From Pecten maximus (lineage: Eukaryota), in assembly GCF_902652985.1 (NCBI RefSeq), contig NC_047015.1, forward strand, positions 12,524,001 to 12,588,000: a stretch of 64,000 nt of DNA, written 5' to 3'. The translations under genes were made by a program, and so were the position numbers. Each line of letters opens with the position of its first letter. Position 1 is the first letter of the stretch. The notes beneath the pieces are model-generated. The model had not been told where the DNA came from. It saw nothing but the letters and a program-made list of their open reading frames with translations, and searched no databases. This document shows positions 10,601-37,548 of this stretch, in pieces.

Positions 10601-12354
10601 CTCATGAAATTGAGAGATACCATTAATGTTTGGTTGCTTTATTTCAAGGGTTGCATGATTCCCGTAACACTGCCCGACTGGCCTGGAGAATGACCAGGGA
10701 TGGATGTATACTGACCACCACTAAAACGCTACAGCTGGTATGACTATTTGTTTGTGAACCACCATATAATATCATACAAAACTAAAGTGTGCAATGTGTT
10801 TTACTGCCCAGATAAAGGCTTAAGAATTAGTTTCGAAGATTGGTAATCATTATACTTTTACAGATTTTAAATTGATTTTTCTTTTAGCACATACATGTAC
10901 TTAAATTTTATCCTGAGTAATTGTAACAATTTTTGTCTCACCTACAATGAAGTCATCTTCAACATTTCACTTAAAGTTTGCTTTTAGATCTGAAGCTCTA
11001 AAAGTATAAGTTCAATTTTAACCAAACTTAGTATATATAGTAGTGGACTTCTCAATACACTCTTAATTTATGGATTATCTTCCAGTCTGAGAATTTATGG
11101 GCGGGGCATATAGTGTTTCCCATGCCCGTTCCGTCCTGTGCTGTCCTCATGCAATGTAAATTAAGAAATAAATAAGAAATTAAAATGTTATTACTTTTGA
11201 ATCATCTTTATTCAATGTATTTGAATTTTTGTGATATGAGTATGATTTTATAAAATAAAGCTTGATAACCTGTGGACCTGTTTGTTGTTTGTTACCAGAT
11301 AGGTGAGGCCAGTGGTAAGACAGAATTACCTACAGCTGTGGACAGTAGTAGGACAAACCGTGGCAATGGGGAGCACTATAATGCTGTCCACAAGACCATC
11401 CCAACTGTCCAAGTCTTAAACAGTCCCAGCAGAAGTCCATGTCACAAGAAGAGGAAAACCGATACATGTGTATCACCCACTAAAAACCCTAGTCACAGTC
11501 GAGATATAGATAAGTTGGTCTCTAGTCCAAGGATTGCTCGCAGTAAAATCCCTGTAAGGTCCCCAAAGTCTGGAGACAATAGAAAGACTGCAACCACAAC
11601 AAAACAATCCATAGTAGATCAGATTTATAGAGATCCTTCTCCTGAGGAAATACCAACAGGAAACCTATTACCAAGAGCAAGTGATAAAAAACAGCTCACT
11701 ATGACGGGTCTTAGAACCAGGAATAACATTATTCCTTGTAATAATCAACAACTGAACCACACATCAACCAGAAATAACACAGCACTCAAAACACCACAGG
11801 GCTTCAAGGCAAATCCAAATGTTCAGGGTAATATTTCTTTTAAGAACCCGTCAAATTATTCCTCATTCAAAACTCCAATCCATGTTGACCACCCTCAGTC
11901 TAGGACATCATGCTGTTATTTGGATTCCTCCAAAAACTCAACAGGGCAAGAAAATATGACATCAATCTCTGGTGATATAACCCCAACCAATTTCTCCACC
12001 AAATTGTCAAAGGGCACAATAAGCAGTATGAAGGTAACACCACCTTTATGTAGATGTGGCAAACGATCAAAGAGACGCATGGCTCAAACGCCAGGGCCTA
12101 ATATGGGCCGATTCTTCTTCACTTGTGGAGCTGGATCACGTCAAAATAATCCTCAGGACAAAAGGAAAGGCTGTGATTATTTTAAGTGGGAATCAACACT
12201 TGGGATAGAAACTAATTCTAGATACAACTGTTCCTTCCAAAGTAGCAGATCAAATACTAGCTTGCCGTTTAAGCAGGTCGGACAGAAAAGTAGATTTTCA
12301 CAACGGAAAAGTCTGGGTGTGAGATCTGCCACATTTAAAACACCAATTAGGTAA
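1605..12354 (+). CDS. ERI2: ERI1 exoribonuclease family member 2 (DEDDh 3'-5' exonuclease plus C-terminal GRF zinc finger), 8 coding exons, about 593 aa
   Basis: Exons 1605-1630, 4566-4633, 7156-7236, 8018-8145, 8893-9043, 9660-9842, 10649-10737, 11299-12354. All introns are GT-AG, phases are consistent, total 1782 nt. Translation MKTTKELARELGLLRKR...YLIVLDFESTCW...EIIEFPAVLLN...LTGITQEQVDEG...FVTWSDWDLGVCL...WIDLRATY...GREHSGLHDSRNTARLAW matches ERI2 motifs. The last exon has the GRF finger CRCG...GPNMGRFFFTC...C. Confidence 0.95.
1928..2760. mobile_element. 833-bp MITE with long (about 260 bp) terminal inverted repeats, hAT-like, in ERI2 intron 1
   Basis: Ends are TAGCCCGAG...CTCGGGCTA. 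Arms are near-perfect reverse complements (identical spurious ORFs on both strands). A near-identical inverted copy lies at 17196-18028. Confidence 0.9.
3217..4441 (+). mobile_element. Helentron-associated (HINE/pearl/DTC84-type) non-autonomous element with about 6.5 internal 155-bp tandem repeats
   Basis: 5' TTAGCC..ACCATCATCAGATGGTGGGCT hairpin, (GTCC)n microsatellite, 155-bp array, 3' ATGGTGGGCGCCAAGATC..GATCTCTTGTT stem-loop. Same family as 21888-24013. Confidence 0.85.
5050..6630. mobile_element. Palindromic foldback element (arms about 190 bp) interrupted by nested insertions
   Basis: 5050-5120 plus 6323-6440 is the reverse complement of about 6450-6630 (AAAATGGTGGCC...CATAAAATGAGGTAAG...GAGCATATG). 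Confidence 0.75.
5121..6322 (+). mobile_element. HINE-type element (155-bp family) nested in the foldback element, itself interrupted by a DNA-transposon fragment at about 5503-6165
   Basis: Starts TTAGCCCACCGTCATCAGATGGTGGGCT and ends GGATCTCTTGTT. The internal foreign segment ends CTGCGCCCTTATTAGGTCAAATATGGTA (TIR-like). Confidence 0.8.
7156..7236 (+). CDS. ERI2: ERI2 exon 3 (ExoI motif DFE)
   Basis: ttccacag acceptor, YLIVLDFESTCWKE, gtaag donor. Confidence 0.9.
7520..7950 (+). mobile_element. Diverged SINE (Meta/Nin-domain-like), same family as 20205-20720
   Basis: TTGCATGATTGTAAGAGACAACTAAA, GACTGGTTAGCCTGTTGTCAG..GCTTCAGTGAGGTAGCACT, (AAACC)n tail. Confidence 0.7.
8018..8145 (+). CDS. 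ERI2: ERI2 exon 4
   Basis: tttccag acceptor, EFPAVLLNTTTGDIESEFHYYVQPQEQPILSDFCHELTGITQ, gtaaa donor. Confidence 0.92.
8146..8490 (+). repeat. About 30-bp degenerate minisatellite starting at the ERI2 exon 4 splice donor
   Basis: Unit approximately AAATGACAAACCTCACTCAGGTAAACTCTA, about 11 copies. Confidence 0.85.
8893..9043 (+). CDS. ERI2: ERI2 exon 5
   Basis: EQVDEGIPLRLCLKKFSKW...ATFVTWS, flanked by ag/gtaaa. Confidence 0.9.
9660..9842 (+). CDS. ERI2: ERI2 exon 6
   Basis: DWDLGVCLFNECRRKQLLKPSQLNSWIDLRATYRKFY...GREHS, flanked by tttcag/gtgaa. Confidence 0.92.
10000..10400 (+). mobile_element. Degraded fragments of the 155-bp HINE family in ERI2 intron 6
   Basis: TTTCTCAAACTTCATATGTAGGTTCC and AAAATGGCCATC motifs shared with 3217-4441. 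Confidence 0.6.
10649..10737 (+). CDS. ERI2: ERI2 exon 7 (ExoIII catalytic Asp)
   Basis: GLHDSRNTARLAWRMTRDGC, flanked by tttcaag/gtatg. Confidence 0.9.
11299..12354 (+). CDS. ERI2: ERI2 terminal exon (disordered S/T-rich linker plus GRF zinc finger)
   Basis: gttaccag acceptor, 352 codons ending in TAA, GRF-type zinc finger near the C-terminus. Confidence 0.9.
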   Translation: MGEASGKTELPTAVDSSRTNRGNGEHYNAVHKTIPTVQVLNSPSRSPCHKKRKTDTCVSPTKNPSHSRDIDKLVSSPRIARSKIPVRSPKSGDNRKTATTTKQSIVDQIYRDPSPEEIPTGNLLPRASDKKQLTMTGLRTRNNIIPCNNQQLNHTSTRNNTALKTPQGFKANPNVQGNISFKNPSNYSSFKTPIHVDHPQSRTSCCYLDSSKNSTGQENMTSISGDITPTNFSTKLSKGTISSMKVTPPLCRCGKRSKRRMAQTPGPNMGRFFFTCGAGSRQNNPQDKRKGCDYFKWESTLGIETNSRYNCSFQSSRSNTSLPFKQVGQKSRFSQRKSLGVRSATFKTPIR

Positions 12355-21151: not shown

Positions 21152-21799
21152 ATGGGAGGCATATTCGGTAAGTTATCCCGGAAACGTCAAATGAGAGTGT
21201 TGTTAAACGGGCTTGATGCTGCAGGTAAAACAACAACTCTATACAAACTCAGACTGGGGGAAGTCGTCACGACAATTCCTACAATCGGTTTGAACATTGA
21301 GACGGTGGAGTGTAAAAAAATACAGTTGGTGACTTGGGACATTGGAGGCAGGGGCTTCTTGCGGCCCCTATATAGAAATTACTATGCCGAGACTGATGCG
21401 GTTGTTTTTGTGGTTGACAGCAATGATAAAGTACGAACTGAACAAGCCCAGAAGCTACTTCTCGCTATCGTGAATGAAGACATGCTCAAGAAAGTGATTA
21501 TTGTCATAATGGCTAACAAACAGGATTTACCCGGATCTATGACTCCAGAGGAGGTCCACGAGAAACTGGACGTGGATTCTATCTGTAAAACTCACACGTG
21601 TAAAGTGTTTGGTACCTCAGCCACCACCGGTGAGGGACTGTATGACATGCTCGATTGGCTTGTAGAGGCTGTCAATAAGAAACAAGCAACAGCGTTACTG
21701 AGAGGAAAGGACGAGTGTGTAACTGTTGAAAAGGATTCTAAGTCATCATACTTTACAACGCCTTTGTCATATATCAAACACGTGTTTTCAAAAGTGTAA
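21152..21799 (+). CDS. Intronless ADP-ribosylation factor-like small GTPase, copy 1 (215 aa, most divergent)
   Basis: MG myristoylation start, GLDAAGKT P-loop, PTIG switch I, WDIGGR (G3), NKQD (G4), TSAT (G5). Confidence 0.95.
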
Positions 21800-21887
21800 G
21801 GAAAGTTAAGTTCGATTATATCACCAACGTCACAGTCACAATACTGGAATAATTTACATATGGCCATTTTTAGTTTAAGCTGTATTT

Positions 21888-24013
21888 TTAGCCCACCATC
21901 ATCAGATGGTGGGCTATTCAAATCGCCCTGCGTCCGTGGTCCGTCGTCCGTCCGTCCGTCCGTCCGTCCTTAAACAATTCTTGTTATCGCTAATCCTCAG
22001 AAAGCACTGAAGAGATCTTTCTCAAACTTCATATGTAGGTTCCCCTTGGTGCCTAGTTATGCATATTGCATTTTGGGACCGATATAAAAACAACATGGCC
22101 GACAGGCAGCCATCTTGGATTTTGACAATTGAAGTTTGTTATCGCTATTTCTGAGAAAGTACTGAAGGGATCTTTCTCAAATTTCATATGTAGGTTCCCC
22201 TTGGTGCCTAGTTATGCATATTGCATTTTGGGACCGATCGGAAAACAACATGGCCGACAGGCAGCCATCTTGGATTTTGACCATTGAAGTTTGTTATCGC
22301 TATTTCTGAGAAAGTACAGAAGGGATCTTTCTCAAATTTCATATGTAGGTTCCCCTTGGTGCCTAGTTATGCATATTGCATGTTGGGACCGATCGAAAAA
22401 CAAGATGTCCGACAGGCAGCCATCTTGGATTTTGACCATTGAAGTTTGTTATCGCTATTTCTGAGAAAGTACTGAAGGGATCTTTCTCAAATTTCATATG
22501 TGGGTTCCCCTTGGTGCCTAGTTATGCATATTGCATTTTGAGACCAATCGTAAAACAACATGGCCGACAGGCAGCCATCTTGGATTTTGACAATTGAAGT
22601 TTGTTATGGCTATTTCTGAGAAAGTACCCAAGGGATCTTTCTCAAATTTCATATGTAGATTCCCCTTGGTGCCTAGTTATGCATATTGCATTTTGAGACC
22701 AATCGGAAAACAACATGGCCGACAGGCAGCCATCTTGGATTTTGACAATTGAAGTTTGTTATCGCTATTTCTGAGAAAGTACTGAAGGGATCTTTCTCAA
22801 ATTTCATATGTAGGTTTCCCTTGGTGCTTAGTTATGCATATTGCATTTTGAGACCTATCGGAAAACAACATGGCCGACAGGCAGCCATCTTGGATTTTGA
22901 CAATTGAAGTTTGTTATCGCTATTTCTGAGGAAGTACTGAAGGGATCTTTCTCAAATTTCATATGTAGATTCCCCTTGGTGCCTAGTTATGCATATTGCA
23001 TTTTGAGATCAATCGGAAAGCAACATGGCCGACAGGCAGCCATCTTGGATTTTGACAATTGAAGTTTGTTATCGCTATTTCTCAGAAAGCACAAAAGGGA
23101 TCGTTCTCAAATTTCAGATGTAGGTTCCTCTTGGTGCCTAGTTATACATATTGCATTTTGAGACCAATCGGAAAACAACATGGCCGACAGGCAGCCATCT
23201 TTGATTTTGACAATTGAAGATTGTTATCGCTATTTCTCAGAAAGTAATGAAGGGATCTTTCTCAAATTTCATATGTAGGTTTCCCTCGGTGCCTAGTTAT
23301 GCATATTGCATTTTGAGACCAATCGGAAAACAACATGGCCGACAGGCAGCCATCTTGGATTTTGACAATTGAAGTTTGTTATCGCTATTTCTGAGAAAGT
23401 ACTGAAGGGATCTTTCTCAAATTTCATATATATGTTCCCCTTGGTGCCTAGTTATGCATATTGTATTTTGAGACCAATCGGAAAACAACATGGCCGACAG
23501 GCAGCCATCTTGGATTTTGACAATTGAAGTTTGTTATCGCTAATTCTCAGAAAGCACAAAAGGGATCTTTCTCAAATTTCAGATGTAGGTTCCTCTTGGT
23601 GCCTAGTTATGCATATTGCATTTTGAGACCAATCGGAAAACAACATGGCCGACAGGCAGCCATCTTGGATTTTGACAATTGAAGTTTGTTATCGCTATTT
23701 CTCAGAAAGTAATGAAGGGATCTTTCTCAAATTTTATATGTAGGTTCCCCTCAGTGCCTAGCTATATATAGTTTTGCATATTGGGACCAATCGGAAAACA
23801 ACATGGCCGACAGACCGCCATTATCGCTAAATCTTAAATTTTATATATAGGTTCCCCTTGTTGGAAAAATACTAGCTATAGAGGGCTGTTTCTGAATTTA
23901 CACAGATTAGTAAGACTTAGAGGAAGGGAAAAGTAGAGAAAAGATCAATCTGACATGGAACCTATAAAGATCATTCAATGGTGGGCGCCAAGATCCCTCT
24001 GGGATCTCTTGTT
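21888..24013 (+). mobile_element. Full-length HINE-type element with about 12 copies of the 155-bp repeat, inserted about 90 bp downstream of ARF copy 1
   Basis: TTAGCCCACCATCATCAGATGGTGGGCT, (GTCC)n, array, 3' stem-loop CCAAGATCCCTCTGGGATCTCTTGTT. Absent at the paralogous T-run after copies 2-4. Confidence 0.92.
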
Positions 24014-24225
24014 TTCAATAGTATATGTATGTTATAAATTGATTTACTAGTATCCTACTTGGTACTTGTATATTGTTACATGTATATGGTTTTGTTTCAT
24101 TTACTTACTGATTCTTGTTTTGATCATGATACTGTTGACCACATGAAATTGCATTATCTTACTACATGTATTATCTTATTTCAATATCATGTTATGTTTG
24201 TTATTTTATCAAAAGATACATTAAA

Positions 24226-24600
24226 GGATCTATATGTCCCATTATTTGTAATTAACCTGATGTTATAGGATCTAGATCTATATGTCTCAATATTTGTAAT
24301 TAACCTGATGTTATAGGATCTAGATCTATATGTCCCATTATTTGTAATGAACCTGATCTCATAGGATCTAGATCTGTATGTCCCATTATTTGTAATTAAC
24401 CTGATCTCATAGGATCTAGATATATGTCCCATTATTTGTAATTAACCTGATGTTATAGGATCTAGATATATATGTCCCATTATTTGTAATTAACCTGATG
24501 TTATAGGATCTAGATCTATATGTCCCATTATTTGTAATTAACCTGATGTTATAGGATCTAGATCTGTATGTCTCATTATTTGTAATTAACCTGGTGTTAC
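24226..24600 (+). repeat. 48-bp minisatellite (about 8 copies), ARF unit 1
   Basis: AGGATCTAGATCTATATGTCCCATTATTTGTAATTAACCTGATGTTAT. Confidence 0.9.
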
Positions 24601-24609
24601 AAGTTACAG

Positions 24610-25205
24610 ATGTAGGAGATGGCTTACTTATTGATTCAAGAGATGATTGACTTACTGATGTAGTAGGTGGTTCACGTGATGATGTTGTAGGTGGTTCACA
24701 TACTGATGTAAGAGGAGACTCGCATACTAATCTAAGATGTGGTTCACATACTGATGTAGGATATGGCTTACTTATTGATTCAGGAGGTGGTTAACCTGCT
24801 ACAGATCTCTGTATGTAGGAAGTGGTTTACTTACTGATGTAGTAGGTGGTTCACATGCTGATGTAAGAGGAGACTCGCATACTAATCTAATATGTGGTTC
24901 CCTTACTGGTGTAGTAGGTGGTTCACTTGCTGATGTAGGGTATGGCTTACCTATTAATTCAGGAGACGGTTGACTTACTGATGAAGTAGGTGGTTCACAT
25001 GCTGATGTAGTGGGTGGTTCACATGCTAATGTAGTGGGTGGTTCACATGCTAATGTAGTAGGTGGTTCACATGCCGATGTAGTGGGTGGTTCACATGGTG
25101 ATGTAGTAGGTGGTTCACATGGTGATGTAGTAGGTGGTTCACACGCTGATGTAGTAGGTGGTTCACTTACTGATGTAGGAAGTATACATAGTTCACGTTA
25201 TGATG
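24610..25205 (+). repeat. 24-bp GGTTCAC..CTGATGTAG minisatellite block
   Basis: Same family as 16000-16840. Confidence 0.85.
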
Positions 25206-25359
25206 TAGTATGTAGTATTATAAAGAGCCGGACCCATTGAACAGTAATTGGGTGTGTTTTATTATATTGCATTCGATTTTTAGAAATAATTTTTAATTGT
25301 GTTACTACGTTTATGAGATTACATGAGCCAATTGGTGAAGTACGACGTTGTCATTACGA

Positions 25360-25820
25360 TACAAAGGGTTATTTCCTCTGTATCTTATTCAAGAAATGTC
25401 AAATATGGGTGTTTAACGGACCTGATCGCCCTGATAAAACAACAGTTCTTTTAAACACAGACTGGGGAAAGTTGTTAAAACAAAAGGCTTAACGTGTAGG
25501 AGGTGGAACATGAACATTGGAGGCAGAGATCTCCCTATAGTGGATACTTTGTTGACACTGACATCTTAGTCTTCTTAGATGAGAGTTTTGACATGGGTCG
25601 AATTGAAGACGCCCAGAAAGCAGCACTGAATGATATGAATTTGTCTGGAGGTATGACTCCAGTAGATAAACTGGACATGGAGGATGTCCACTACCCCAGG
25701 GTTACCCTGATTACCGAGAATGGGCTATCCATAAAACCCACACCTACACGCCTGTGAATTATAGTATGAGATACCTCAGCCACCACCCGGGAAGAATTGT
25801 ACTGGGTTGTAAAGGCTGCT
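25360..25820 (+). pseudogene. Heavily decayed ARF-like pseudogene A
   Basis: Collinear nucleotide remnants of the ARF CDS (TTAACGGACCTGAT, TAAAACAACA, AGACTGGGGAA, TTGGAGGCAG, ATGACTCCAG, AAACTGGACATGG, TACCTCAGCCACCACC) with deletions and frameshifts. Confidence 0.75.
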
Positions 25821-26630
25821 GAGATTCGATATTAATGTCGTTTTGTTACAGTTGAACTAAATGTTCATAAAACCTTCTTTACGTCTTCTGACTCGATTGT
25901 ACTGTTACATCTCTATCATTATTGGTATTCTGTACCGAAGTTTATTTGAGGTTTCAGTTATATGAACAATTTACAAACCACCCGCCTACAACCAAAAATG
26001 GCATATCATCAGTATTTTTGTTAAGTAATCCGTGTTACGAATCATACATAATGTATTTACGTGTATAATGTTTGGGGAAGTTATGCGTTGCATCTAAGAG
26101 TCCACTTTATTGAATGGGATACGGATATATCGACATAACAAAACCTTACAATCATGGGTACTTGTAAACGTTTTGACAGTCACCTATAGTAACCTGTATC
26201 AAAATGTAAATGATAACCACGATTGAGCAAAGCTCACAATTAACCTAAACTGTTCTAAATTGGTATGGAAATATTTCTACGTACAAGATCAAAGTGTGTT
26301 CGGAATAGATATCGAGCTGTTTTGTTGTATAAATTACGTTAAAAGTCCTAGATACATGCGAACATGTGTTTGTGTAAAAGTATAAAAGTCAGCTGATGGT
26401 GTCCTGAAGACAGTACCAAGAGTGATTGTATACCACACTGTTGTGGTCTGTAGATGATGCAAAAATACATAAATCCACGGACATGTTTAAATCATATTAT
26501 CATGTATTTGCCAACTTTCAAACATCTGCTATCTGTCCCGATACTGATAAAATCTAACCATTTAAAATTGTGTAAAGCTTATTTTTGTATTTGAATGCCG
26601 TTCAGCATTATGCCTGAAAATTTCTCCTTT

Positions 26631-27345
26631 TTAGCTCGTCTCTTCGAAGAAGAGTGAGAGCTTATGTCGTCACTCCGGCGTCGGCGTTGGTTTTTCAAAT
26701 TTTAAATGTTTGGTGCAAGAGTAGTAATAGTAATTTATGGTAATATAGTCCTTCTGGGGGTTAAACTATCCCCTGCCGGAGTTAAACTTAAAGATTTTTT
26801 TTGGGAGGAAAAAGACAGATTTTGAAAATGTTTGCGTTAAGTTTTTGTGCAAATGTTGAAAGCTAATAACACATCACTTTATGATTGTACTAGGGTGCTG
26901 ATGTTTGGTAAAAGAGTCCATATGGAGTTACACCATCACTTCTTGTGATGTAACTGAAAATAAAACAATGTGAAAATTCTCACATTAGACAATTTAGTCC
27001 ACAGTCCAGTCCACATTTTTCAAGGTAAACAACTCTCATAAGGATAATATTTAATCAAAAAATTGAAGAAATATGTCCAAAAGCAATTACATTTGTATTT
27101 GATATATTCATTTAATCAACAACAGCATAACTAATCTCCCGAATGTTTTTCAATAAATAATTGATATATATATATAAATTGATATGGTTTTGAAAATTGC
27201 ATGAATTCACAAAACATAATCTGATCAAGTAAACAATATAAATATTATTTATGCAATTTGCGAAACCATTCCAATTGATGTATTTTAATTATTTATTGAC
27301 AAATGTTTGCGAGACGAGCTATGCTGTTCTCCAACAGCTTTTGTT
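26631..27345 (+). mobile_element. HINE-type element without a satellite array, upstream of ARF copy 2
   Basis: Subterminal inverted repeat AGCTCGTCTC/GAGACGAGCT, (GGCGTC)n, 3' stem-loop then TTGTT. Absent upstream of copies 1 and 3. Confidence 0.85.
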
Positions 27346-27626
27346 TACTCTGCAACTTGTAAGTTTAAATGGAAAATTCTGTTGGATTAGTTCAGAGTAG
27401 GTAATCATGTGCCATCAAGGTGTAATAAATCTTCTGTATATACTTATTTACTAAACTCAAATTTGTAGCGTGTAGCGACATACCTGATTATGCCCCCTGC
27501 TTCAATAGTCATTTGGAACAGCGTGGCCTTGTTTACACATCACCTGGTGACGTGTATCGGAGTATAAATACCACAGGTACACAATACAATAGGTAATGTG
27601 TAAGGGCCGGGTGTCTGTCCGCAGCA

Positions 27627-28274
27627 ATGGGAGGCATATTCTGTAAATTATTCCGGAAACGTCAAATGAGAGTGTTGTTAAACGGGCTTGATGCTGCAGG
27701 TAAAACAACAACTCTATACAACCTCAGACTTGGGGAAGTCGTCACGACAATTCCTACAATCGGTTTTAACGTTGAGACGGTGGAGTATAAAAAAATACAG
27801 TTGGTGACTTGGGACGTTGGAGGCAGGGACAAAATGCGGCCCCTGTATAGACATTACTACACCGGGACTGATGCGGTTGTTTTTGTTGTTGACAGTAATG
27901 ATAAAGAACGAACTGAAGAAGCCAAGAAGGAACTTCATGCTATCATGAAGGAAGACATGCTCAATGAAGTGATTATTGTCATAATGGCTAACAAACAGGA
28001 TTTACCCGGATCTATGACTCCAGAGGAGGTCCACGAGAAACTGGACGTGGATTCTATCTGTAAAACTCACACGTGTAAAGTGTTTGGTACCTCAGCCACC
28101 ACCGGTGAGGGACTGTATGACATGCTCGATTGGCTTGTAGAGGCTGTCAATAAGAAACAAGCAACAGCGATACTGAGAGGAAAGGACGAGTGTGTAACTG
28201 TTGAAAAGGATTCTAAGTCATCATACTTTACAACGCCTTTGTCATATATCAAACACATGTTTTCAAAAGTGTAA
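27627..28274 (+). CDS. Intronless ARF-like small GTPase, copy 2 (215 aa)
   Basis: [42 protein letters not shown]. Confidence 0.95.
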
Positions 28275-28679
28275 GGAAAGTTAAGTTCGATTATATCACT
28301 AACGTCACAGTCACAATACTGGTATAATATAAATATTGCCATTTTTAGTTTAAGCTGTATTTTTTTTTTCAATATATAGTATATGTATACTATAAATTGA
28401 TTTACTAGTAGCCTACTTGGTACTTGTATATTGTTACATGTATATGGTTTTGTTTCATTTACTTACTGATACTTGTTTTTATCATGATACTGTTGAACAC
28501 ATGAAATTGCATTATCTTACTACATGTATTATCTTATTTCAATATCATGTTATGTTTGTTGTTTTATTAAAACATACATTAAAGGATCTGTATGTCTCAT
28601 TATTTGTAATGAACCTGATGTTATAGGATCTAGATCTATATGTCCCATTATTTGTAATTAACCTGGTGTTACAAGTTAC

Positions 28680-29730
28680 AGATGTAGGAGATGGCTTACT
28701 TATTGATTCAGGAGATGATTGACTTACTGATGTAGTAGGTGGTTCACGTGATGATGTAGTAGTTGGTTCACATACTGATGTAAGAGGAGACTCGCATACT
28801 AATCTAATATGTGGTTCACTTACTGGTGTAGTAGGTGGTTCACTTGCTGATGTAGGGTATGGCGTACCTATTAATTCAGGAGATGGTTGACTTACTGATG
28901 AAGTAGGTGGTTCACATGCTGATGTAGTGGGTGGTTCACATGCTAATGTAGTAGGTGGTTCACATGGTGATGAAGTAGGTGGTTCCCATGGTGATGTGGT
29001 AGGTGGTTCACACGCTGATGTAGTAGGTGGTTCACTTGCTGATGTAGGGTATGGCTTACCTATTGATTCAGGAGATGGTTTACCTGCTACATATCTCTGT
29101 ATGTAGGAGATGGTTCACTTACTGATGTAGGAAGTATACATAGTTCACGTTATGATGTAGTATGTAGTATTATAAAGAGCCGGACCCATTGAACAGTAAT
29201 TGGGAGATGTAGGAGATGGCTTACTTATTGATTCAGGAGATGATTGACTTACTGATGTAGTAGGTGGTTCACGTGATGATGTAGTAGGTGGTTCACATAC
29301 TGATGTAAGAGGAGACTCGATTACTAATCTAATATGTGGTTCACTTACTGGTGTAGTAGGTGGTTCACTTGCTGATGTAGGGTATGGCGTACCTATTAAT
29401 TCAGGAGATGGTTGACTTACTGATGAAGTAGGTGGTTCACATGCTGATGTAGTGGGTGGTTCACATGCTAATGTAGTAGGTGGTTCACATGGTGATGAAG
29501 TAGGTGGTTCACATGGTGATGTGGTAGGTGGTTCACACGCTGATGTAGTAGGTGGTTCACTTGCTGATGTAGGGTATGGCTTACCTATTGATTCAGGAGA
29601 TGGTTTACCTGCTACATATCTCTGTATGTAGGAGATGGTTCACTTACTGATGTAGGAAGTATACATAGTTCACGTTCTGATGTAGTATGTAGTATTATAA
29701 AGAGCCGGACCCATTGAACAGTAATTGGGT
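28680..29730 (+). repeat. 24-bp minisatellite block, itself tandemly duplicated (about 525 bp x2)
   Basis: 28680-29204 is repeated at 29205-29730. Confidence 0.85.
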
Positions 29731-30109
29731 GTGTTTTATTATATTGCATTTGATTTTGAGAAATAATTTTTAATTGTGTTACTAACAAATTCGTTATTTG
29801 AATCAGTCTTTGAAAAATGGAGCTATATACTACGAACATAGTCATAATCATAGGACAAGAAGGAGGAGGATGTAGGCCATCACCTCGTGACACATTTTAT
29901 AAAGAATCAAACAAAGAGAGAGTAATGTTGCTTAATTCAACAACATTTTGTTTACATGTCCTTATGTAGTATAGTTTTTGATCTGCCGATGAAAGATGAT
30001 TTTCTCACACATATAACGTATTGTTTTTATTTGCAAAAACATTGTCTGTATGTGTGCGTTTATGAGATTACATGAGCCAATTGGTGAAGTACGACTTTGT
30101 CATTACGAT

Positions 30110-30572
30110 ACAAAGGGCTATTTCCTCTGTATCTTATTCAAGAAATGTCAAATATGTGTGTTGTTTAACGGACCTGATCGCCATGATAAAACAACAGTTC
30201 TTTTAAACACAGACTGGGGAAAGTTGTTAAAACAAAAGGCTTAACGTGTAGGAGGTGAAACATGAACATTGGAGGCAGAGATCTCCCTATAGTGGATACT
30301 TTGTTGACACTGACATCTTAGTCTTCGTAGATGAGAGGTTTTACATGGGTCGAATTGAAGACGCCCAGAAAGCAGCACTGAATGATATGAATTTGTCTGG
30401 AGGTATGACTCCAGTAGATAAACTGGACATGGAGGATGTCCACTACCCCAGGGTTACCCTGATTACCGAGAATGGACTATCCATAAAACCCACACCTGTA
30501 CGCCTGTGAATTATAGTATGAGATACCTCAGTCACCACCCGGGAAGAATTGTACTGGGTTGTAAAGGCTGCT
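30110..30572 (+). pseudogene. Heavily decayed ARF-like pseudogene B
   Basis: Near-identical to pseudogene A; residual translation ICVLFNGPDRHDKTTVL is a degraded P-loop. Confidence 0.75.
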
Positions 30573-31662
30573 GAGATTCGATATTAATGTCGTTTTGTTA
30601 CAGTTGAACTAAATGTTAATAAAACCTTCTTTACGTCTCCTGACTCGATTGTACTGTTACATCTCTATCATTATAGATATTCTGTACCGAAGTTTATTTG
30701 AAGTTTCAGTTATGTGAACAATTTACAAACCACCCGCTTACAAACAAATAATGGCATATCATGAATATTTTTCTTTAGTAATCTGTGTTACAAATCCGTG
30801 TGGTTTTCCATCAATTACAGGTACATAATGCATTTACGTGTATAATGTTTTGGGAAGTTATGCGTTGCATCTAAGAGTCCACTTTATTGAATGGGATACG
30901 GATATATCGACATAACAAAACCTTACAATCATGGGTACTTGTAAACGTTTTGACAGTCACCTATAGTAACCTGTATCAAAATGTAAATGATAACCACGAT
31001 TGAACAAAGCTCACAATTAACCTAATCTGTTCTAAATTTGTATGGAAACATATCTACGTACAAGATCAAAGTTGATTCGGACTAGATATCGAGCTGTTTT
31101 GTATAGATTACGTTAAAATCCTAGATACATGCGAAAATGTGTTTGTAAAAGTATAACTGTCAGCTGATGGTGTCCTGAAGACAATACCAAGAGTGACTGT
31201 ATAACACTGTTGTGGTCTGTAGATGATTGAAAAATTTATAAATCCACGGACATGTCTTAATTATCCTGTATTTGCTAACTTTCAAACGTGGTATCTGTCT
31301 CGATACTGATAAAATCTAACCATTTAAAATTGTTTAAAGCTTAATTTCTATTTGAATGCCGTTCAACATCATACGTGAACATTTCTCATTGTTTTTACTC
31401 TACAACATGCAAGGTTAAATAGAAAATTATATTGGATTAATTTTAGAATTTGTAACGATGTCACGTAACGGTGTAATACATCTTCTGTATATACGTATTT
31501 ACTAAACGCAAATTTGTAGCGTGCAGCGACATATCTGATTATGCCCCCTGTTTTCAGTCTGGCCTTGTTTACACATCACCTGGTGACGTGTATCGGAGTA
31601 TAAATACCACAGGTACACAATACAATAGGTAATGTGTAAGGGCCGGGTGTCTCTCCGCAGTA

Positions 31663-32310
31663 ATGGGAGGCATATTCTGTAAATTATTCCGGAAACGTCA
31701 AATGAGAGTGTTGCTGAACGGACTTGATGCTGCAGGTAAAACAACAATTCTTTACCAACTCAGACTTGGGGAAGTCGTCACGACAATTCCCACAATCGGT
31801 TTTAACGTTGAGACGGTGGAATATAAGAACGTGCAGTTGGTAACATGGGACGTTGGAGGCAGGGACAAAATGCGGCCCCTATTTAGACATTACTATCCGG
31901 GGACTGATGCGGTTGTTTTTGTGGTTGACAGTAATGATAAAGAACGAACTGAACAAGCTCAGAAGGAACTTCATGCTATCATTAAGGAAGACTCGGTGAA
32001 GGAAGTTATAATTGTCATAATGGCCAACAAACAGGATTTACCCGGATCTATGACTCCAGAGGAGGTCCACGAGAAACTGGACGTGGATTCTATCTGTAAA
32101 ACTCACACGTGTAAAGTGTTTGGTACCTCAGCCACCACCGGTGAGGGACTGTATGACATGCTCGATTGGCTTGTAGAGGCTGTCAATACGAAACAAGCAA
32201 CAGCGATATTGAGAGGAAAGGACGAGTGTGTAACTGTTGAAAAGGATTCCAAGTCATCATACTTTACAACGCCTTTGTCATATATCAAACACATGTTTTC
32301 AAAAGTGTAA
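31663..32310 (+). CDS. Intronless ARF-like small GTPase, copy 3 (215 aa)
   Basis: [47 protein letters not shown]. Confidence 0.95.
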
Positions 32311-32615
32311 GGAAAGTTAAGTTCGATTATATCACCAACGTCACAGTCACAATACTGGAATAATTTACATATGGCCATTTTTAGTTTAAGCTGTATTTTT
32401 TTCAATATATAGTATATGTATGTTATAAATTGATTTACTAGTAGCCTACTTGGTACTTGTATATTGTTATATGTATATGGTTTTGTTTCATTTATTTACT
32501 GATACTTGTTTTTATTAAGATACTGTTGAACACATCAAATTGCATTATCTTACTACATGTATTATCTTATTTCAATATCATGTTATGTTTGTTATTTTAT
32601 TAAAAGATACATTAA

Positions 32616-32993
32616 AGGATCTGTATGTCTCATTATTTGTAATTAACCTGATGTTATAGGATCTAGGTATATATGTCTCATTATTTGTAATTAACCTGAT
32701 GTTATAGGATCTAGATCTATATGTCCCATTATTTGTAATTAACCTGATGTTATAGGATCTAGATCTATATGTCTCAATATTTGTAATTAACCTGATGTTA
32801 TAGGATCTAGATATGTATGTCCCATTATTTGTAATTAACCTGATGTTATAGGATCTAGATCTATATGTCCCATTATTTGTAATTAACCTGATGTTATAGG
32901 ATCTAGATTTGTATATCCCATTATTTGTAATTAACCTGATCTCATAGGATCTAGATCTGTATGTCCCATTATTTGTAATTAACCTGGTGTTAC
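32616..32993 (+). repeat. 48-bp minisatellite (about 8 copies), ARF unit 3
   Basis: Same unit as 24226-24600. Confidence 0.9.
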
Positions 32994-33609
32994 AAGTTAC
33001 AGATGTAGGAGATGGCTTACTTATTGATTCATGAGATGGTTGGACTTACTGATGTAGTAGGTGGTTTACGTATGGTTTACCTGCAGCGCTACAGATCTCT
33101 GTATGTAGGAGATGGTTCACTTACTGATGTAGGAAGTATACATAGTTCACGTTCTGATGTAGTATGTAGTATTATAAAGAGCCGGACCCATTGAACAGTA
33201 ATTGGGTGTGTGTTATTGTATTGCATTTGTTTTTTAGAAATAATTTTTAATTGTGTTACTAACAAATTCGTTATTTGAATCAGTCTTTGAAAAATGGAGC
33301 TATAGACTACGAACATAGTTATAATCATAGGACAAGAAGGAGGAGGATGTAGGCCATCACCTCGTGATACATTTTATAAAGAATCAAGCAAGAAGAAAGT
33401 AACGTTGCTTAATTCAACAACATTTTGTTTATATGTCCGAGGTAGTATAGCTTTTGATCTGCTGACACTTTTCGCACGAATATAATGTAGTTTTTTTGGT
33501 GTTTTTTTTTCTAAAACATTATCTATATGTGTGCGTAAATTAGATTACATTGGCAGCCCCTGACCCAATTAGTGACATACTGTTATTACTGGAATTTGTT
33601 ATTACGATA

Positions 33610-34115
33610 CAAAGGGTTATTTCCTCTGTATATTCATGTACGACAGGTATGGTATATTTGTAAATTATTCCTTATTGGAAAAAAAAAAGTCAAATATGGG
33701 TGCTGTTAAACGGACCTGATCGCCCTGGTAAAACAACAGTTTTCTGAAACTCGGACTGGGGACTGGAAATTTAAAACAAAGGGCTTAACGTGTAGGAGTT
33801 GGAACATAAGCATGGGAGGCAGAGATCTCCCTAAAGTGGATACTTTGTTGACACTGATATCTTTATTTTCTTAGATGAGAGTTTTGACATGGGTCGAATT
33901 GAAGACGCCCAGAAAGCAGCACTGAATGATATGAATTTGTCTGGAGGTATGACTCCAGTAGATAAACTGGACGTGGAGGATGTCCACTACCCCAGGGAAC
34001 CCTGGTTACCAAGAATGGGCTATCCATAAAACCCACACCTACACGCCTGTGCGTTATAGTATGAGATACCTCAGTCACCACCCGGGAAGAATTGTACTGG
34101 GTTGTAAAGGCTGCT
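33610..34115 (+). pseudogene. Heavily decayed ARF-like pseudogene C
   Basis: GTGCTGTTAAACGGACCTGATCGCCCTGGTAAAACAACA (VLLNGPDRPGKTT) and the same downstream remnants as A and B. Confidence 0.78.
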
Positions 34116-34924
34116 GAGATTCGATATTAATGTCGTTTTGTTACAGTTGAACTAAATGTTAATAAAACCTCCTTTACGTCTTCTGACTCGATTGTACTGT
34201 TACATCTCTATCATTATAGATATTCTGTACCGAAGTTTATTTGAAGTTTCAGTTATGTGAACAATTTACAAACCACCCGCCTACAACCAAAAATGGCATA
34301 TCATCAGTATTTTTGTTAAGTAATCCGTGTTACGAATCATACATAATGTATTTACGTGTATATTGTTTGGGGAAGTTATGCGTTGCATCTAAGAGTCCAC
34401 TTTATTGAATGGGATACGGATATATCGACATTACATAACCTTACAATCATGGGTACTTGTAAACGTTTTGACAGTCACCTATAGTAACCTGTATCAAAAT
34501 GTAAATGATAACCATGATTGAGCAAAGCTCACAATTAACCTAATCTGTTCTAAATTTGTATGGAAATATTTCTATGTACAAGATCAAAGTGTGTTCGGAA
34601 TAGATATCGAGCTGTTTTGTTGTATAAATTACGTTAAAAGTCCTAGATACATGCGAACATGTGTTTGTGTAAAAGTATAAAAGTCAGCTGATGGTGTCCT
34701 GAAGACAGTGCCAAGAGTGATTGTATACCACACTGTTGTGGTCTGTAGATGATGCAAAAATATATAAATCCACGGACATGTTTAAATCATATTATCATGT
34801 ATTTGCCAACTTTCAAACATCTGCTATCTGTCCCGATACTGATAAAATCTAACCATTTAAAATTGTGTAAAGCTTATTTTCTATTTGAATGCCGTTCAGC
34901 ATTATGCATGAAAATTTCTCCTTT

Positions 34925-35638
34925 TTAGCTCGTCTCTTCGAAGAAGAGTGAGAGCTTATGTCGTCACTCCGGCGTCGGCGTTGGTTTTTCAAATTTTAAA
35001 TGTTTGGTGCAAGTGTAGTAATAGTAATTTAGGGTAATATAGTCCTTCTGGGGGTTAAACTATCCCCTGCCGGAGTTAAACAAAGATTTTTTTGGGGGGG
35101 GGGAAAAACAGATTTTGAAAATGTTTGCGTTAAGTTTTTGTGCAAATGTTGAAAGCTAATAACACATCACTTTATGATTGTACTAGGGTGCTGATATTTG
35201 GTAAAAGAGTCCCTATGGAGTTACACCATCACTTCTTGTGATGAAACTGAAAATAAAACAATGTGAAAATGCTCACATTAGACAATTTAGTCCACAGTCC
35301 AGTCCACATTTTTCAAGGTAAACAACTCTCATAAGGATAATATTTTATCAAAAAAATGAAGAAATATGTCCAAAAGCAATTACATTTGTATTTGATATAT
35401 TCATTTAATCAACAACAGCATAACTAATCTCCCGAATGTTTTTCAATAAATAATTGATATATATATATAAATTGATATGGTTTTGAAAATTGCATGAATT
35501 CACAAAACATAATCTGATCAAGTAAACAATATAAATATTATTTATGCAATTTGCGAAACCATTCCAATTGATGTATTTTAATTATTTATTGACAAACGTT
35601 TGCGAGACGAGCTATGCTGTTCTCCAACGGCTTTTGTT
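34925..35638 (+). mobile_element. Paralogous copy of the 26631-27345 HINE-type element, upstream of ARF copy 4
   Basis: Same insertion point and near-identical sequence. Confidence 0.85.
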
Positions 35639-35919
35639 TACTCTGCAACTTGTAAGTTTAAATGGAAAATTCTGTTGGATTAGTTCAGAGTAGGTAATCA
35701 TGTGCCATAAAGGTGTAATAAATCTTCTGTATATACTTATTTACTAAACTCAAATTTGTAGCGTGTAGCGACATACCTGATTATGCCCCCTGCTTCAATA
35801 GTCATTTGGAACAGCGTGGCCTTGTTTACACATCACCTGGTGACGTGTATCGGAGTATAAATACCACAGGTACACAATACAATAGGTAATGTGTAAGGGC
35901 CGGGTGTCTGTCCGCAGCA

Positions 35920-36568
35920 ATGGGAGGCATATTCTGTAAATTATTCCGGAAACGTCAAATGAGAGTGTTGTTAAACGGACTTGATGCTGCAGGTAAAACA
36001 ACAACTCTATACAAACTCAGACTTGGGGAAGTCGTCACGACAATTCCTACAATCGGTTTGAACATTGAGACGGTGGAGTATAAAAAAATACAGTTGGTGA
36101 CTTGGGACGTTGGAGGCAGGGACAAAATGCGGCCCCTGTATAGACATTACTACACCGGGACTGATGCGGTTGTTTTTGTTGTTGACAGTAATGATAAAGA
36201 ACGAACTGAAGAAGCCAAGAAGGAACTTCATGCTATCATGAAGGAAGACATGCTCAATGAAGTGATTATTGTCATAATGGCCAACAAACAGGATTTACCC
36301 GGATCTATGACTCCAGAGGAGGTCCACGAGAAACTGGACGTGAATTATATCCGTAAAACCCACACGTGTAAAGTGTTTCGGTACCTCAGCCACCACCGGT
36401 GAGGGACTGTATGACATGCTCGATTGGCTTGTAGAGGCTGTCAATACGAAACAAGCAACAGCGTTACTGAGAGGAAAGGACGAGTGTGTAACTGTTGAAA
36501 AGGATTCTAAATCATCATACTTTACAACGCCTTTGTCATATATCAAACACATGTTTTCAAAAGTGTAA
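35920..36568 (+). pseudogene. ARF-like copy 4 with a +1 frameshift (ORF 35920-36402, 160 aa)
   Basis: Extra C at 36379 (GTGTTTCGGTACC vs GTGTTTGGTACC). The rest of the CDS is intact in another frame up to the paralogous TAA at 36568. Confidence 0.85.
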
Positions 36569-36880
36569 GGAAAGTAAGTTCGATTATATCACCAACGTCA
36601 CAGTCACAATACTGGTATAATATAAATATTGCCATTTTTAGTTTAAGCTGTATTTTTTTTTCAATATATAGTACAGTATATGTATACTATAAATTGATTT
36701 ACTAGTAGCCTACTTGGTACTTGTATATTGTTACATGTTTATTGTTTTGTTTCATTTACTTACTGATACTTGTTTTTAATCATGATACTGTTGAACACAT
36801 GAAATTACATTATCTTACTACATGTATTATCTTATTTCATTATCATGTTATGTTTGTTATTTTATTAAAAGATACATTAA

Positions 36881-37548
36881 AGGATCTGTATGTCTCATTA
36901 TTTGTAATGAACTTGTTGTTATAGGATCTAGATCTATATGTCCCATTATTTGTAATTAACCTGATGTTATAGGATCTAGATATATATGTCCCATTATTTG
37001 TAATGAACCTGATCTCATAGGATCTAGATATGTATGTCCCATTATTTGTAATTAACTTGATCTCATAGGATCTAGATCTATATGTCCCATTATTTGTAAT
37101 TAACCTGATGTTATAGGATCTAGATCTGTATGTCCCATTATTTGTAATTAACCTGATGTTATAGGATCTAGATCTGTATGTCCCATTATTTGTAATTAAC
37201 CTGATCTCATAGGATCTAGATCTGTATGTTCCATTATTTGTAATTAACCTGATGTTATAGGATCTAGATCTGTATGTCCCATTATTTGTAATTAACCCGA
37301 TCTCATAGGATCTAGATCTATATGTCTCATTATTTGTAATTAACCTGATCTCATAGGATCTAGATCTATATGTCTCAATATTTGTAATGAACCTGGTGTT
37401 ATAGAATCTAGATATATATGTCTCAATATTTGTAATGAACCTGGTGTTATAGAATCTAGATCTGTATGTCCCATTATTTGTAATTAACCTGATGTTATAG
37501 GATCTAGATCTGTATGTCCCATTATTTGTAATTAACCTGTTGTTACAA
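36881..37548 (+). repeat. 48-bp minisatellite (about 14 copies), ARF unit 4
   Basis: Same unit; explains the spurious 239-aa ORF. Confidence 0.9.

What the first reader, a model, noticed from the sequence alone, without database searches (positions are those of the whole stretch)
21152..36568. Tandem array of ARF-like GTPases that all lack the catalytic switch-II glutamine (Q67R) and are predicted to be GTP-locked
Seen: all four copies read WD[VI]GGR instead of WDVGGQ (AGG codons at 21350, 27825, 31861, 36118), and the three decayed pseudogenes also keep GGAGGCAGA (GGR). The signature Trp of wDvGGqxxxRxxW is Tyr or Phe, while G1, G2, G4, G5 and the myristoylation Gly2 are intact in copies 1-3. 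Established: ARF6 Q67/ARF1 Q71 is required for GAP-stimulated hydrolysis, and Q-to-L mutants are constitutively active. Inference: this is a lineage-specific subfamily of membrane-anchored, hydrolysis-deficient ARFs, not housekeeping ARF1/6. Intronless structure, TATA promoters and birth-and-death turnover are typical of inducible defence or stress genes.
Basis: partly seen in the sequence, partly recalled or inferred. Interest (0 to 1): 0.85.

Follow-up and report, generated by a model that had tools for sequence, protein, structure and literature searches.

The report
Scallop tandem array of Arl20 GTPases
Four tandem, intronless ARF-type GTPase genes in a scallop genome do carry arginine in place of the catalytic glutamine, but this is the normal state of an old animal-wide ARF branch named Arl20 in 2021, so the array is a local expansion of a known, functionally unstudied family.

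Summary
Four same-strand ARF genes (three intact at 215 aa; one with a 1-bp insertion) all read WD[VI]GGR, with AGG at the stated coordinates. Three decayed fragments keep GGAGGCAGA.

The reading "lineage-specific subfamily" does not hold. In a careful tree the genes sit (99/96) in a clade with amphioxus, hemichordate, sponge and other mollusc proteins. These correspond to "Arl20" of Vargová et al. 2021 (PMC8358228). Arg at the Gln site is found in 33 of 33 undecayed members I sampled and in every Arl20 sequence of that paper that I saw.

What is particular to scallops:
- The Arl20b-type gene is intronless and sits next to an ERI2-like gene, also in Mizuhopecten.
- It was amplified separately in Pecten (4 genes and 3 fragments) and in Argopecten (4 genes).
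- The three fragments are copies of one older pseudogene carried along with the duplication unit.

RNA-seq contigs cover copy 3 without a splice. dN/dS against other scallops is 0.15-0.31.

"GTP-locked" is plausible but untested. K-Ras Q61R/K is inactive. Human TRIM23 has Lys at this site, shows GTPase activity, and its K458I mutant is called GTPase-dead.

No evidence bears on a defence role.

Verdict: new member of a known kind, moderate interest.

The parts
21152..21799 (+). Copy 1: intact intronless Arl20b-type ARF gene, 215 aa. Most divergent copy (Gly6 instead of Cys6; GGRGFL).
21350..21352 (+). AGG codon for Arg67 of copy 1. The same codon lies at 27825, 31861 and 36118 in copies 2-4.
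21981..23821 (.). 155-bp satellite, 11.9 copies, directly 3' of copy 1
25367..25901 (+). Pseudogene fragment psi1 (stops, frameshifts, internal deletion; GGAGGCAGA at 25519)
27627..28274 (+). Copy 2: intact, 215 aa. RNA-seq contigs cover 27648-28004.
30116..30653 (+). Pseudogene fragment psi2, 97.3% identical to psi1 (GGAGGCAGA at 30271)
31237..31242 (+). TATAAA 23-37 nt upstream of where RNA contigs of copy 3 begin (31260 and 31274). Possible core promoter.
31663..32310 (+). Copy 3: intact, 215 aa. RNA-seq contigs run unspliced from about 31274 to 32663; AATAAA/ATTAAA signals lie at 32599 and 32611.
32618..32992 (.). 48-bp minisatellite just 3' of copy 3. The same repeat lies at 24227-24599 and 36883-37545, with a partial copy at 28585-28749.
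33682..34200 (+). Pseudogene fragment psi3, about 90% identical to psi1 and psi2 (GGAGGCAGA at 33815)
35920..36568 (+). Copy 4: reading frame broken by one inserted C at 36379 after codon 153, otherwise 96% identical to copy 2
11272..12354 (+). Upstream neighbour: exon-sized ORF with a GRF zinc finger (ERI2-like). The same kind of neighbour lies upstream of the single Mizuhopecten gene.

Best explanation
The array is a Pecten-lineage tandem amplification of the scallop Arl20b-type gene. Arl20 is a branch of the ARF family derived from an Arf1-like ancestor. It occurs from sponges to amphioxus and was lost in vertebrates.

Shown:
- The proteins keep every nucleotide-binding element and a switch I and interswitch almost identical to ARF1.
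- Gly2 is kept, and Cys6 in copies 2-4. For the Lottia and Capitella Arl20 proteins published predictors call these myristoylated and palmitoylated.
- Arg67 replaces the catalytic Gln. This is an ancestral, family-wide trait, accompanied by Asp82, Ala83 and a C-terminal tail of about 40 residues.
- The scallop gene is intronless and lies next to an ERI2-like gene.
- A unit of old pseudogene plus gene was copied several times in Pecten, and separately in Argopecten.
- Copy 3 is present in RNA libraries as an unspliced message.

Inferred:
- The protein is loaded with GTP by Sec7-type exchange factors on membranes, as ARFs are.
- It cannot be switched off by the canonical ArfGAP mechanism, which needs the Gln. 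It therefore stays GTP-bound far longer than ARF1, and its activity is set mainly by expression, lipidation and turnover (about 45%).
- Alternatively it uses a non-canonical hydrolysis route (about 30%).
For: Identity:
- Pfam Arf at E 1e-58 to 1e-65; best solved relatives are ARF1 at about 55-59% identity.
- In the careful ML tree the clade of Arg-bearing, tailed proteins has support 99/96 and includes amphioxus P0296/P0317. These are near-identical to the paper's BflArl20b.
- The paper's Arl20 sequences from Saccoglossus, Adineta, Lottia a and b, Capitella, Branchiostoma and Amphimedon all carry Arg at this site.
- Arg67 is found in 33 of 33 members, and Asp82/Ala83 are diagnostic.

Scallop-specific history:
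- The four window copies are monophyletic (100/97), as are the four Argopecten genes (97/88).
- Mizuhopecten has a single intronless copy beside an RNase_T + GRF gene. Argopecten has four tandem intronless genes.
- Mercenaria and Haliotis relatives have introns.
- The only other Arg-bearing ARF locus in this genome is a multi-exon gene on C16 resembling LgiArl20a.

Function retained:
- dN/dS against other scallops is 0.15-0.31.
- RNA-seq contigs cover copy 3 from 31274 to 32663 without joints. Depth peaks on the gene and is zero in the flanks in four runs.

Hydrolysis:
- K-Ras Q61K/L/R is reported completely inactive, and NF1 has no effect on Q61R.
Against: - No biochemical data exist for any Arl20 protein.
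- Human TRIM23 has Lys at the same column (residue 458 by my count). It has measurable GTPase activity, and K458I is described as GTPase-dead. A basic residue here can therefore coexist with, or even serve, hydrolysis in an ARF fold.
- The strong conservation of both switches would also fit a protein that still cycles.
- The RNA evidence comes from assembled contigs in RNA libraries. These cannot prove transcript ends or exclude DNA carry-over.
- Copy 1 evolves fast (dN/dS 1.07 against copy 2) and has lost Cys6, so not every copy need be functional.
- The window genes lack the three introns that helped to define Arl20.
Confidence: 0.62

Rival explanations
1. The proteins hydrolyse GTP, by a route that does not need the Gln. 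Either Arg67 itself contributes to catalysis, as Lys458 appears to in TRIM23, or a dedicated partner supplies the missing catalytic residue in trans, as Rap1GAP does for Rap (which lacks the Gln; from my own knowledge). They would then be ordinary cycling switches with a private GAP.
For: - TRIM23 has WDVGGK. It has GTPase activity, and K458I is called GTPase-dead.
- Arg67 is invariant in 33 of 33 members over a clade reaching from sponges to chordates, rather than drifting among non-catalytic residues. This suggests a positive role for the side chain.
- Both switches and the interswitch are conserved as in cycling ARFs.
Against: - In K-Ras both Q61R and Q61K abolish intrinsic hydrolysis, and Q61R does not respond to NF1.
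- No partner or GAP is known for Arl20.
- The TRIM23 assay was an overnight bead assay from cell lysates, so its mechanism is not resolved.
Confidence: 0.3
2. The array is a set of decaying retrocopies without function, kept only by recent duplication. The Arg is then of no present consequence in this genome.
For: - The genes are intronless.
- One copy is frameshifted, and three fragments are dead.
- Copy 1 shows dN/dS of about 1 against copy 2.
- A very degenerate paralogue lies 550 kb away (L008).
Against: - Three copies have full open frames with all G motifs.
- dN/dS is 0.15-0.31 across scallop genera at dS 0.6-1.1.
- An orthologous intronless gene is kept at the same genomic position in Mizuhopecten.
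- No intron-bearing Arl20b-type gene was found elsewhere in the genome, so this array is the only source of that protein.
- RNA contigs lie on copies 2 and 3.
Confidence: 0.05
3. The copies are inducible immune or stress effectors, or decoys for pathogen factors that bind ARFs.
For: - Tandem amplification occurred independently in two scallop lineages.
- Amino-acid differences among copies lie mostly in switch I, switch II and helix 3.
Against: - Synonymous differences are concentrated in the same half of the gene (15:7 against 28:6, Fisher p 0.33). The 3' half is 97-99% identical between copies. The pattern therefore fits regional homogenisation as well as selection.
- No expression data under challenge were available.
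- TATA-like strings are not aligned between copies.
Confidence: 0.1

Closest known systems
Arl20 (Vargová et al. 2021, Genome Biol Evol, PMC8358228), in particular the type of Lottia LgiArl20b
   Same: - Same clade in my tree, through the amphioxus orthologues.
- WDxGGR, RPL[YFW]RHY[YF], T-D-A before strand 4, and a C-terminal tail of 35-45 residues ending in an aromatic/Lys/Phe motif.
- N-terminus MGxxxCKL with Gly2 and Cys6.
- Present in invertebrates only.
   Different: - The scallop genes have no introns, whereas three special intron positions helped to define the clade. The paper also lists single-exon Arl20 genes in Adineta.
- They are amplified in tandem.
- Asn precedes the P-loop (NGLDAAGKT).
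ARF1/ARF4/ARF6 (true Arfs)
   Same: - 55-59% identity.
- Identical switch I and interswitch, P-loop and NKQD.
- N-terminal myristoylation signal.
   Different: - Arg instead of the catalytic Gln (ARF1 Q71, ARF6 Q67).
- Tyr or Phe instead of the second Trp.
- Asp-Ala instead of Gln-Gly before strand 4.
- A C-terminal tail of about 40 residues.
- Outside the Arf group in the tree.
ARF domain of human TRIM23 (ARD1)
   Same: Arf1-derived GTPase domain with a basic residue (Lys458) at the Gln position and HYY after switch II. It shows that such a domain can still have GTPase activity.
   Different: - TRIM23 carries RING, B-box and coiled-coil domains and no myristoylation signal.
- It has Lys, not Arg.
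- A TRIM23-like exon in this scallop genome (C4:40689914) reads GGQ, so the basic residue is probably not a shared inheritance.
Ras Q61R/K oncogenic mutants and naturally GTP-bound atypical GTPases (Rnd, RhoH; from my own knowledge)
   Same: The catalytic Gln is replaced. Activity is expected to be set by abundance and location rather than by a GAP.
   Different: These belong to other subfamilies. For Arl20 the nucleotide state has never been measured.

Membership tests
ARF family (Pfam PF00025) | Profile match above the curated cut-off | tested here: met
   198-219 bits against a cut-off of 22.3 for copies 1-3, 190 bits for copy 4
ARF family (Pfam PF00025) | G1 GLDAAGKT, switch-I Thr, DxxG, NKxD, SAT/CAT, Gly2 | tested here: met
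   All present in copies 1-4
True Arf (Arf1/4/6) | Catalytic Gln in WDVGGQ | tested here: not met
   Arg (AGG) in all four copies
True Arf (Arf1/4/6) | Groups with Arf1/4/6 in a phylogeny | tested here: not met
   Separated from the 11 ARF1/4/6 rows; the window genes lie in the 37-row clade with support 99/96
Arl20 (Vargová et al. 2021) | Monophyly with recognised Arl20 sequences, separate from Arf1 | tested here: met
   Clade 99/96 includes P0296/P0317, the Branchiostoma orthologues of the paper's BflArl20a/b as judged by eye against the supplement text. The paper's own sequences were not put in the tree.
Arl20 (Vargová et al. 2021) | Three family-specific intron positions | tested here: not met
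   The window genes are single-exon and RNA contigs show no joints. The C16 paralogue has exon breaks near codons 46, 70/71 and 150, but I did not compare these with the published positions. The paper itself counts single-exon Adineta genes as Arl20.
Arl20 (Vargová et al. 2021) | Found in unicellular holozoans and invertebrates, absent from vertebrates | tested here: met
   Named relatives with GGR plus a tail come from molluscs, hemichordates, amphioxus and sponges. No vertebrate protein was among the Arg-bearing proteins of the lists.
Arl20 (signature derived here) | Arg67, Asp82, Ala83 and a C-terminal extension | tested here: met
   R67 in 33/33, D82 in 29/33, A83 in 27/33 members against Q, Q, G in 11/11 ARFs. 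A tail is present in all.
Constitutively GTP-bound GTPases | No intrinsic or GAP-stimulated hydrolysis; GTP-bound when isolated | not testable with these tools
   Only analogies are available: K-Ras Q61R inactive; TRIM23 with Lys458 active

The most novel reading that the evidence does not exclude
Arl20 as a whole, conserved from sponges to amphioxus and lost in vertebrates, is a natural ARF switch without a canonical off-step. Arg67 either locks it in the GTP form or replaces the Gln/GAP-finger pair by a built-in basic residue. The protein would then be governed by dual lipidation, its C-terminal tail and gene dosage. The independent retrogene arrays in scallops would be dosage expansions of such a switch.
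Probability: 0.35. Interest if true: 0.6.

Novelty: new member of a known kind. Interest (0 to 1): 0.4.

Why it matters
The local finding is ordinary: a lineage-specific tandem expansion of a gene family that already has a name.

The wider point may be useful to ARF researchers. Every sampled member of Arl20 lacks the catalytic glutamine and has arginine there. In the library I could search, the family appears only in the 2021 survey (held there as preprint and journal version). The main text of that paper mentions neither "glutamine" nor "catalytic". Arl20 therefore offers a natural, conserved test case for how an ARF fold works with a basic residue at the catalytic position. It can be set beside TRIM23 (Lys) and the Ras Q61R/K mutants.

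Scallops, with several expressed intronless copies, give easy material for cloning.

Tried and rejected
- The many 350-410 aa "double ARF" proteins at the top of both homology searches are merged or tandem ARF1 models with GGQ, not relatives of interest. This includes Amphimedon P0008, which I first took for the paper's Arl20a+b.
- Amphipathicity of the tail: the hydrophobic moment of the last 11 residues is 0.53-0.55, and 9-16% of shuffles reach it. Inconclusive.
- The AlphaFold2 model gives a confident GTPase core but pLDDT below 50 for residues 186-215, so nothing can be said on where the tail docks. I did not run a fold search, because the fold is not in question.
- An alignment of the regions about 430-460 nt upstream of the four start codons did not show a TATA box conserved in register. 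The bacterial-type promoter scan is irrelevant to this eukaryote.
- The cluster look-up for unnamed Arg-bearing proteins gave no taxa except Oscarella pearsei.
- A literature search for ARF-family papers on a missing catalytic glutamine found nothing on this clade.
- The exons of the C16 gene were searched one by one.
- Copy 4 entered the tree as its two pieces joined by X. In one script the inserted base was skipped only to count differences, and nothing was printed.
- Read laying was used once on 6000 letters. Copies 1 and 4 were therefore not examined for RNA, and the 36379 insertion was not checked against reads.
Full report
**The observation**

The + strand between 21 and 37 kb holds four ARF-type open frames.
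- 21152-21799, 27627-28274 and 31663-32310 are each 215 codons in a single exon.
- 35920-36402 is 160 codons. It continues in another frame to 36565.

All four match Pfam Arf (PF00025) at E 1e-56 to 1e-65. The proteins read WDIGGR (copy 1) or WDVGGR (copies 2-4). The residue in the place of the second signature Trp is Tyr in copies 1, 2 and 4 and Phe in copy 3. Gly2, GLDAAGKT, the switch-I Thr, NKQD and SAT are intact.

Copy 4 is broken by one inserted C at 36379 after codon 153.

Three strongly decayed fragments lie at about 25367-25901, 30116-30653 and 33682-34200. They carry GGAGGCAGA at 25519, 30271 and 33815.

**The genome**

The assembly has 918,306,378 bases in 3983 contigs, and the window is C1:12524001-12588000. 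Contig C15 is 38,817,130 bases long. That is the length of the contig that carries NCBI proteins labelled Pecten maximus. I take the organism to be the king scallop.

**What the genes are**

The nearest proteins are 65-72% identical. They come from other scallops (Argopecten, Mizuhopecten, Ylistrum), are 215-218 residues long, and have GGR and the same C-terminal ending.

At 44-55% identity the same two features (GGR and a C-terminal extension of 35-45 residues) recur widely:
- unionid mussels, Mercenaria, abalone and a chiton;
- the hemichordates Ptychodera and Glandiceps;
- amphioxus;
- homoscleromorph, calcareous and demosponges.

Vargová et al. 2021 (PMC8358228) named two new holozoan ARF branches, Arl19 and Arl20. 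They describe Arl20 as first mistaken for Arf1, marked by three special introns, present in unicellular holozoans and invertebrates, and lost in vertebrates.

The sequences in their supplement labelled Arl20 all have Arg at the Gln position and a C-terminal extension. These come from Branchiostoma a and b, Amphimedon a and b, Saccoglossus, Adineta, Lottia a and b, and Capitella. Most read GGR; Lottia a and Amphimedon b read GSR. My amphioxus proteins P0296 and P0317 are near-identical to their BflArl20b.

I built a careful maximum-likelihood tree of 54 proteins.
- All Arg-bearing, tailed animal proteins form one clade (99/96), apart from ARF1, ARF4 and ARF6.
- Scallops form a clade within it (98/82).
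- The four window copies are each other's closest relatives (100/97).
- The four Argopecten genes are likewise monophyletic (97/88).

Comparing the clade with the true Arfs gives a short signature:
- Thr/Ala/Ser61;
- Arg67 in 33 of 33 undecayed members, against Gln in 11 of 11 Arfs;
- Asp82;
- Ala83;
- Leu/Met120.

The library I could search holds "Arl20" only in that paper (held as preprint and journal version). Its main text never uses the words "glutamine" or "catalytic". As far as I can see, the family has a name but no described function, and the Arg has not been discussed.

**What is special to scallops**

The genome holds only one other ARF locus with Arg at this site: a multi-exon gene on C16. 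Its exons read [17 protein letters not shown] and NKCD, and closely resemble Lottia Arl20a. I searched its exons one by one and did not join them.

The window array is of the Lottia Arl20b type (MGxxxCKL, GGR). It is the only source of that type in the genome.

Gene structure differs among relatives.
- Mercenaria and Haliotis genes span 2.8 and 4.4 kb for about 227 codons, so they have introns.
- The genes of the three scallops examined and the Sinanodonta gene are exactly as long as their coding sequence.
- A retrocopy, or complete intron loss, therefore replaced the parent. Whether this happened once for scallops and unionids is not resolved by the tree.

Mizuhopecten has a single copy 3 kb downstream of a gene with RNase_T and GRF zinc-finger domains. 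In the window a GRF zinc-finger exon lies at 11272-12354. The position is therefore ancestral for scallops.

Pecten and Argopecten amplified the gene independently.

**Structure of the array**

In Pecten the repeated unit was "old pseudogene plus gene".
- Each fragment lies 1.5-2.3 kb upstream of copies 2, 3 and 4.
- The fragments are 97% (psi1-psi2) and about 90% (psi3) identical to each other, but only about 76% identical to the live gene.
- So there was one ancient death and one very recent frameshift, not repeated turnover.

Each gene is followed by a 48-bp minisatellite. Copy 1 is followed by a 155-bp satellite.

**Are the genes alive?**

dN/dS between the Pecten copies and the Mizuhopecten or Argopecten genes is 0.15-0.31 at dS 0.6-1.1.

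I laid contigs from two RNA-seq runs and two further runs of other studies, recorded only as probable RNA, on 27400-33399.
- They cover copy 3 continuously from 31274 to 32663 with no joint.
- Depth peaks over 31800-32600 in all four runs.
- There is nothing at 27400-27599 or 33000-33399.
- Copy 2 is covered at 27648-28004.

A TATAAA at 31237 and polyadenylation signals at 32599 and 32611 fit these limits. Contigs cannot prove transcript ends, and DNA carry-over cannot be excluded. The on-gene, off-flank pattern nevertheless favours transcription.

Copy 1 has many private replacements (Gly6, GGRGFL, helix 3), and its dN/dS against copy 2 is 1.07.

Differences among copies crowd into codons 1-114. 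Nonsynonymous differences split 28:6 between the two halves. Synonymous ones do the same (15:7, Fisher p 0.33). The 3' halves are 97-99% identical. The crowding on the switch face noted elsewhere in this scan therefore need not reflect selection. Homogenisation of the 3' half explains it as well.

**How it probably works**

Shown:
- The nucleotide pocket is complete.
- Switch I and the interswitch are almost letter for letter those of ARF1.
- Gly2 is present, and Cys6 in copies 2-4. For the Lottia and Capitella Arl20 proteins, published predictors call Gly2 myristoylated and the early Cys palmitoylated.
- The AlphaFold2 model has a confident ARF core, a long last helix (163-187) and a low-confidence tail with a short terminal helix.

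Inferred:
- The protein is loaded with GTP on membranes like an ARF.
- Canonical ArfGAP catalysis needs the Gln together with the GAP's arginine finger (established for ARF1 Q71 and ARF6 Q67). It should therefore fail.
- In K-Ras, Q61R and Q61K abolish intrinsic hydrolysis, and NF1 does not help Q61R (bioRxiv 10.1101/2025.11.04.686643).

Against certainty:
- Human TRIM23 reads WDVGGK. The Lys is residue 458 by my count.
- The protein has GTPase activity, and K458I is described as GTPase-dead (PMC12075517).
- The absolute conservation of Arg, rather than any non-catalytic residue, also hints at a positive role.

My odds:
- slow or absent canonical hydrolysis with control by abundance, lipidation and turnover: about 45%;
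- a non-canonical hydrolysis route: about 30%;
- something else: the rest.

I found nothing that bears on a role in defence or stress.

**Verdict**

The sequence observation is right. The evolutionary reading is wrong in scope, and the biochemical reading is a reasonable but untested inference. The array is a new, scallop-specific expansion of a known kind.

Noticed in passing
G000:C1:13136432-13137070 (- strand; locus L008:1501-2139): About 550 kb from the array lies an open, intronless 213-aa frame. It still passes Pfam Arf (57 bits) and keeps the family's C-terminal ending (..SFKGMFSKI), but its motifs are degenerate (GPDGAGKT, WNMFG, NQRS). It is either a pseudo-GTPase or a very old decaying copy.
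   Followed up: partly
G000:C16:37234778-37239224 (loci L033, L035): Multi-exon gene of the Arl20a type ([21 protein letters not shown]) resembling Lottia LgiArl20a, with exon breaks near codons 46, 70/71 and 150. The exons were not joined.
   Followed up: partly
G000:C15:26068702-26136604 (loci L016-L030): At least eight tandem multi-exon ARF1-type genes (GGQ) within about 70 kb. NCBI models of this region merge neighbours into 358-408 aa 'double ARF' proteins, one of them labelled TRIM23-like.
   Followed up: partly
G000:C3:16088140-16098113 (loci L012-L015): Cluster of Arl19-like exons (..VSPCKGVSFTVWDVGGQ..) on both strands, some with stop codons.
   Followed up: no
window 21592-21921, 28067-28372, 32103-32405, 36295-36552 (- strand): Antisense open frames of 85-109 aa overlap the 3' part of each ARF gene and are conserved between copies. 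Most simply they are a by-product of the conserved sense sequence.
   Followed up: no
window 24187-24432 and 36843-37562 (- strand): The 48-bp minisatellite 3' of the genes is open on the minus strand and produces repetitive ORFs (up to 239 aa, ..ITNNGTYRSRSYEIRL..). This is almost certainly not a gene.
   Followed up: no
window 47158-48900 (+) and 56190-57482 (+): Downstream neighbours: an intronless BTB-BACK-Kelch gene (580 aa) and a Cys-loop ligand-gated channel ORF (430 aa).
   Followed up: partly
G000:C4:40689914-40690030 (locus L040): An exon resembling the TRIM23 ARF domain (KNVKFTIWDVGGQHK) reads Gln where human TRIM23 has Lys458. The Lys of vertebrate TRIM23 may therefore be a later change.
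   Followed up: no
locus L037 (Haliotis asinina) and L031 (Argopecten irradians): Abalone has three tandem intron-bearing genes with Arf-family (Pfam) products; the one I looked up (P0054) is Arl20-type. Bay scallop has four tandem intronless ones, two of them decaying (175 aa; 204 aa with Ser for Arg67). Tandem amplification of this family seems to recur in molluscs.
   Followed up: partly
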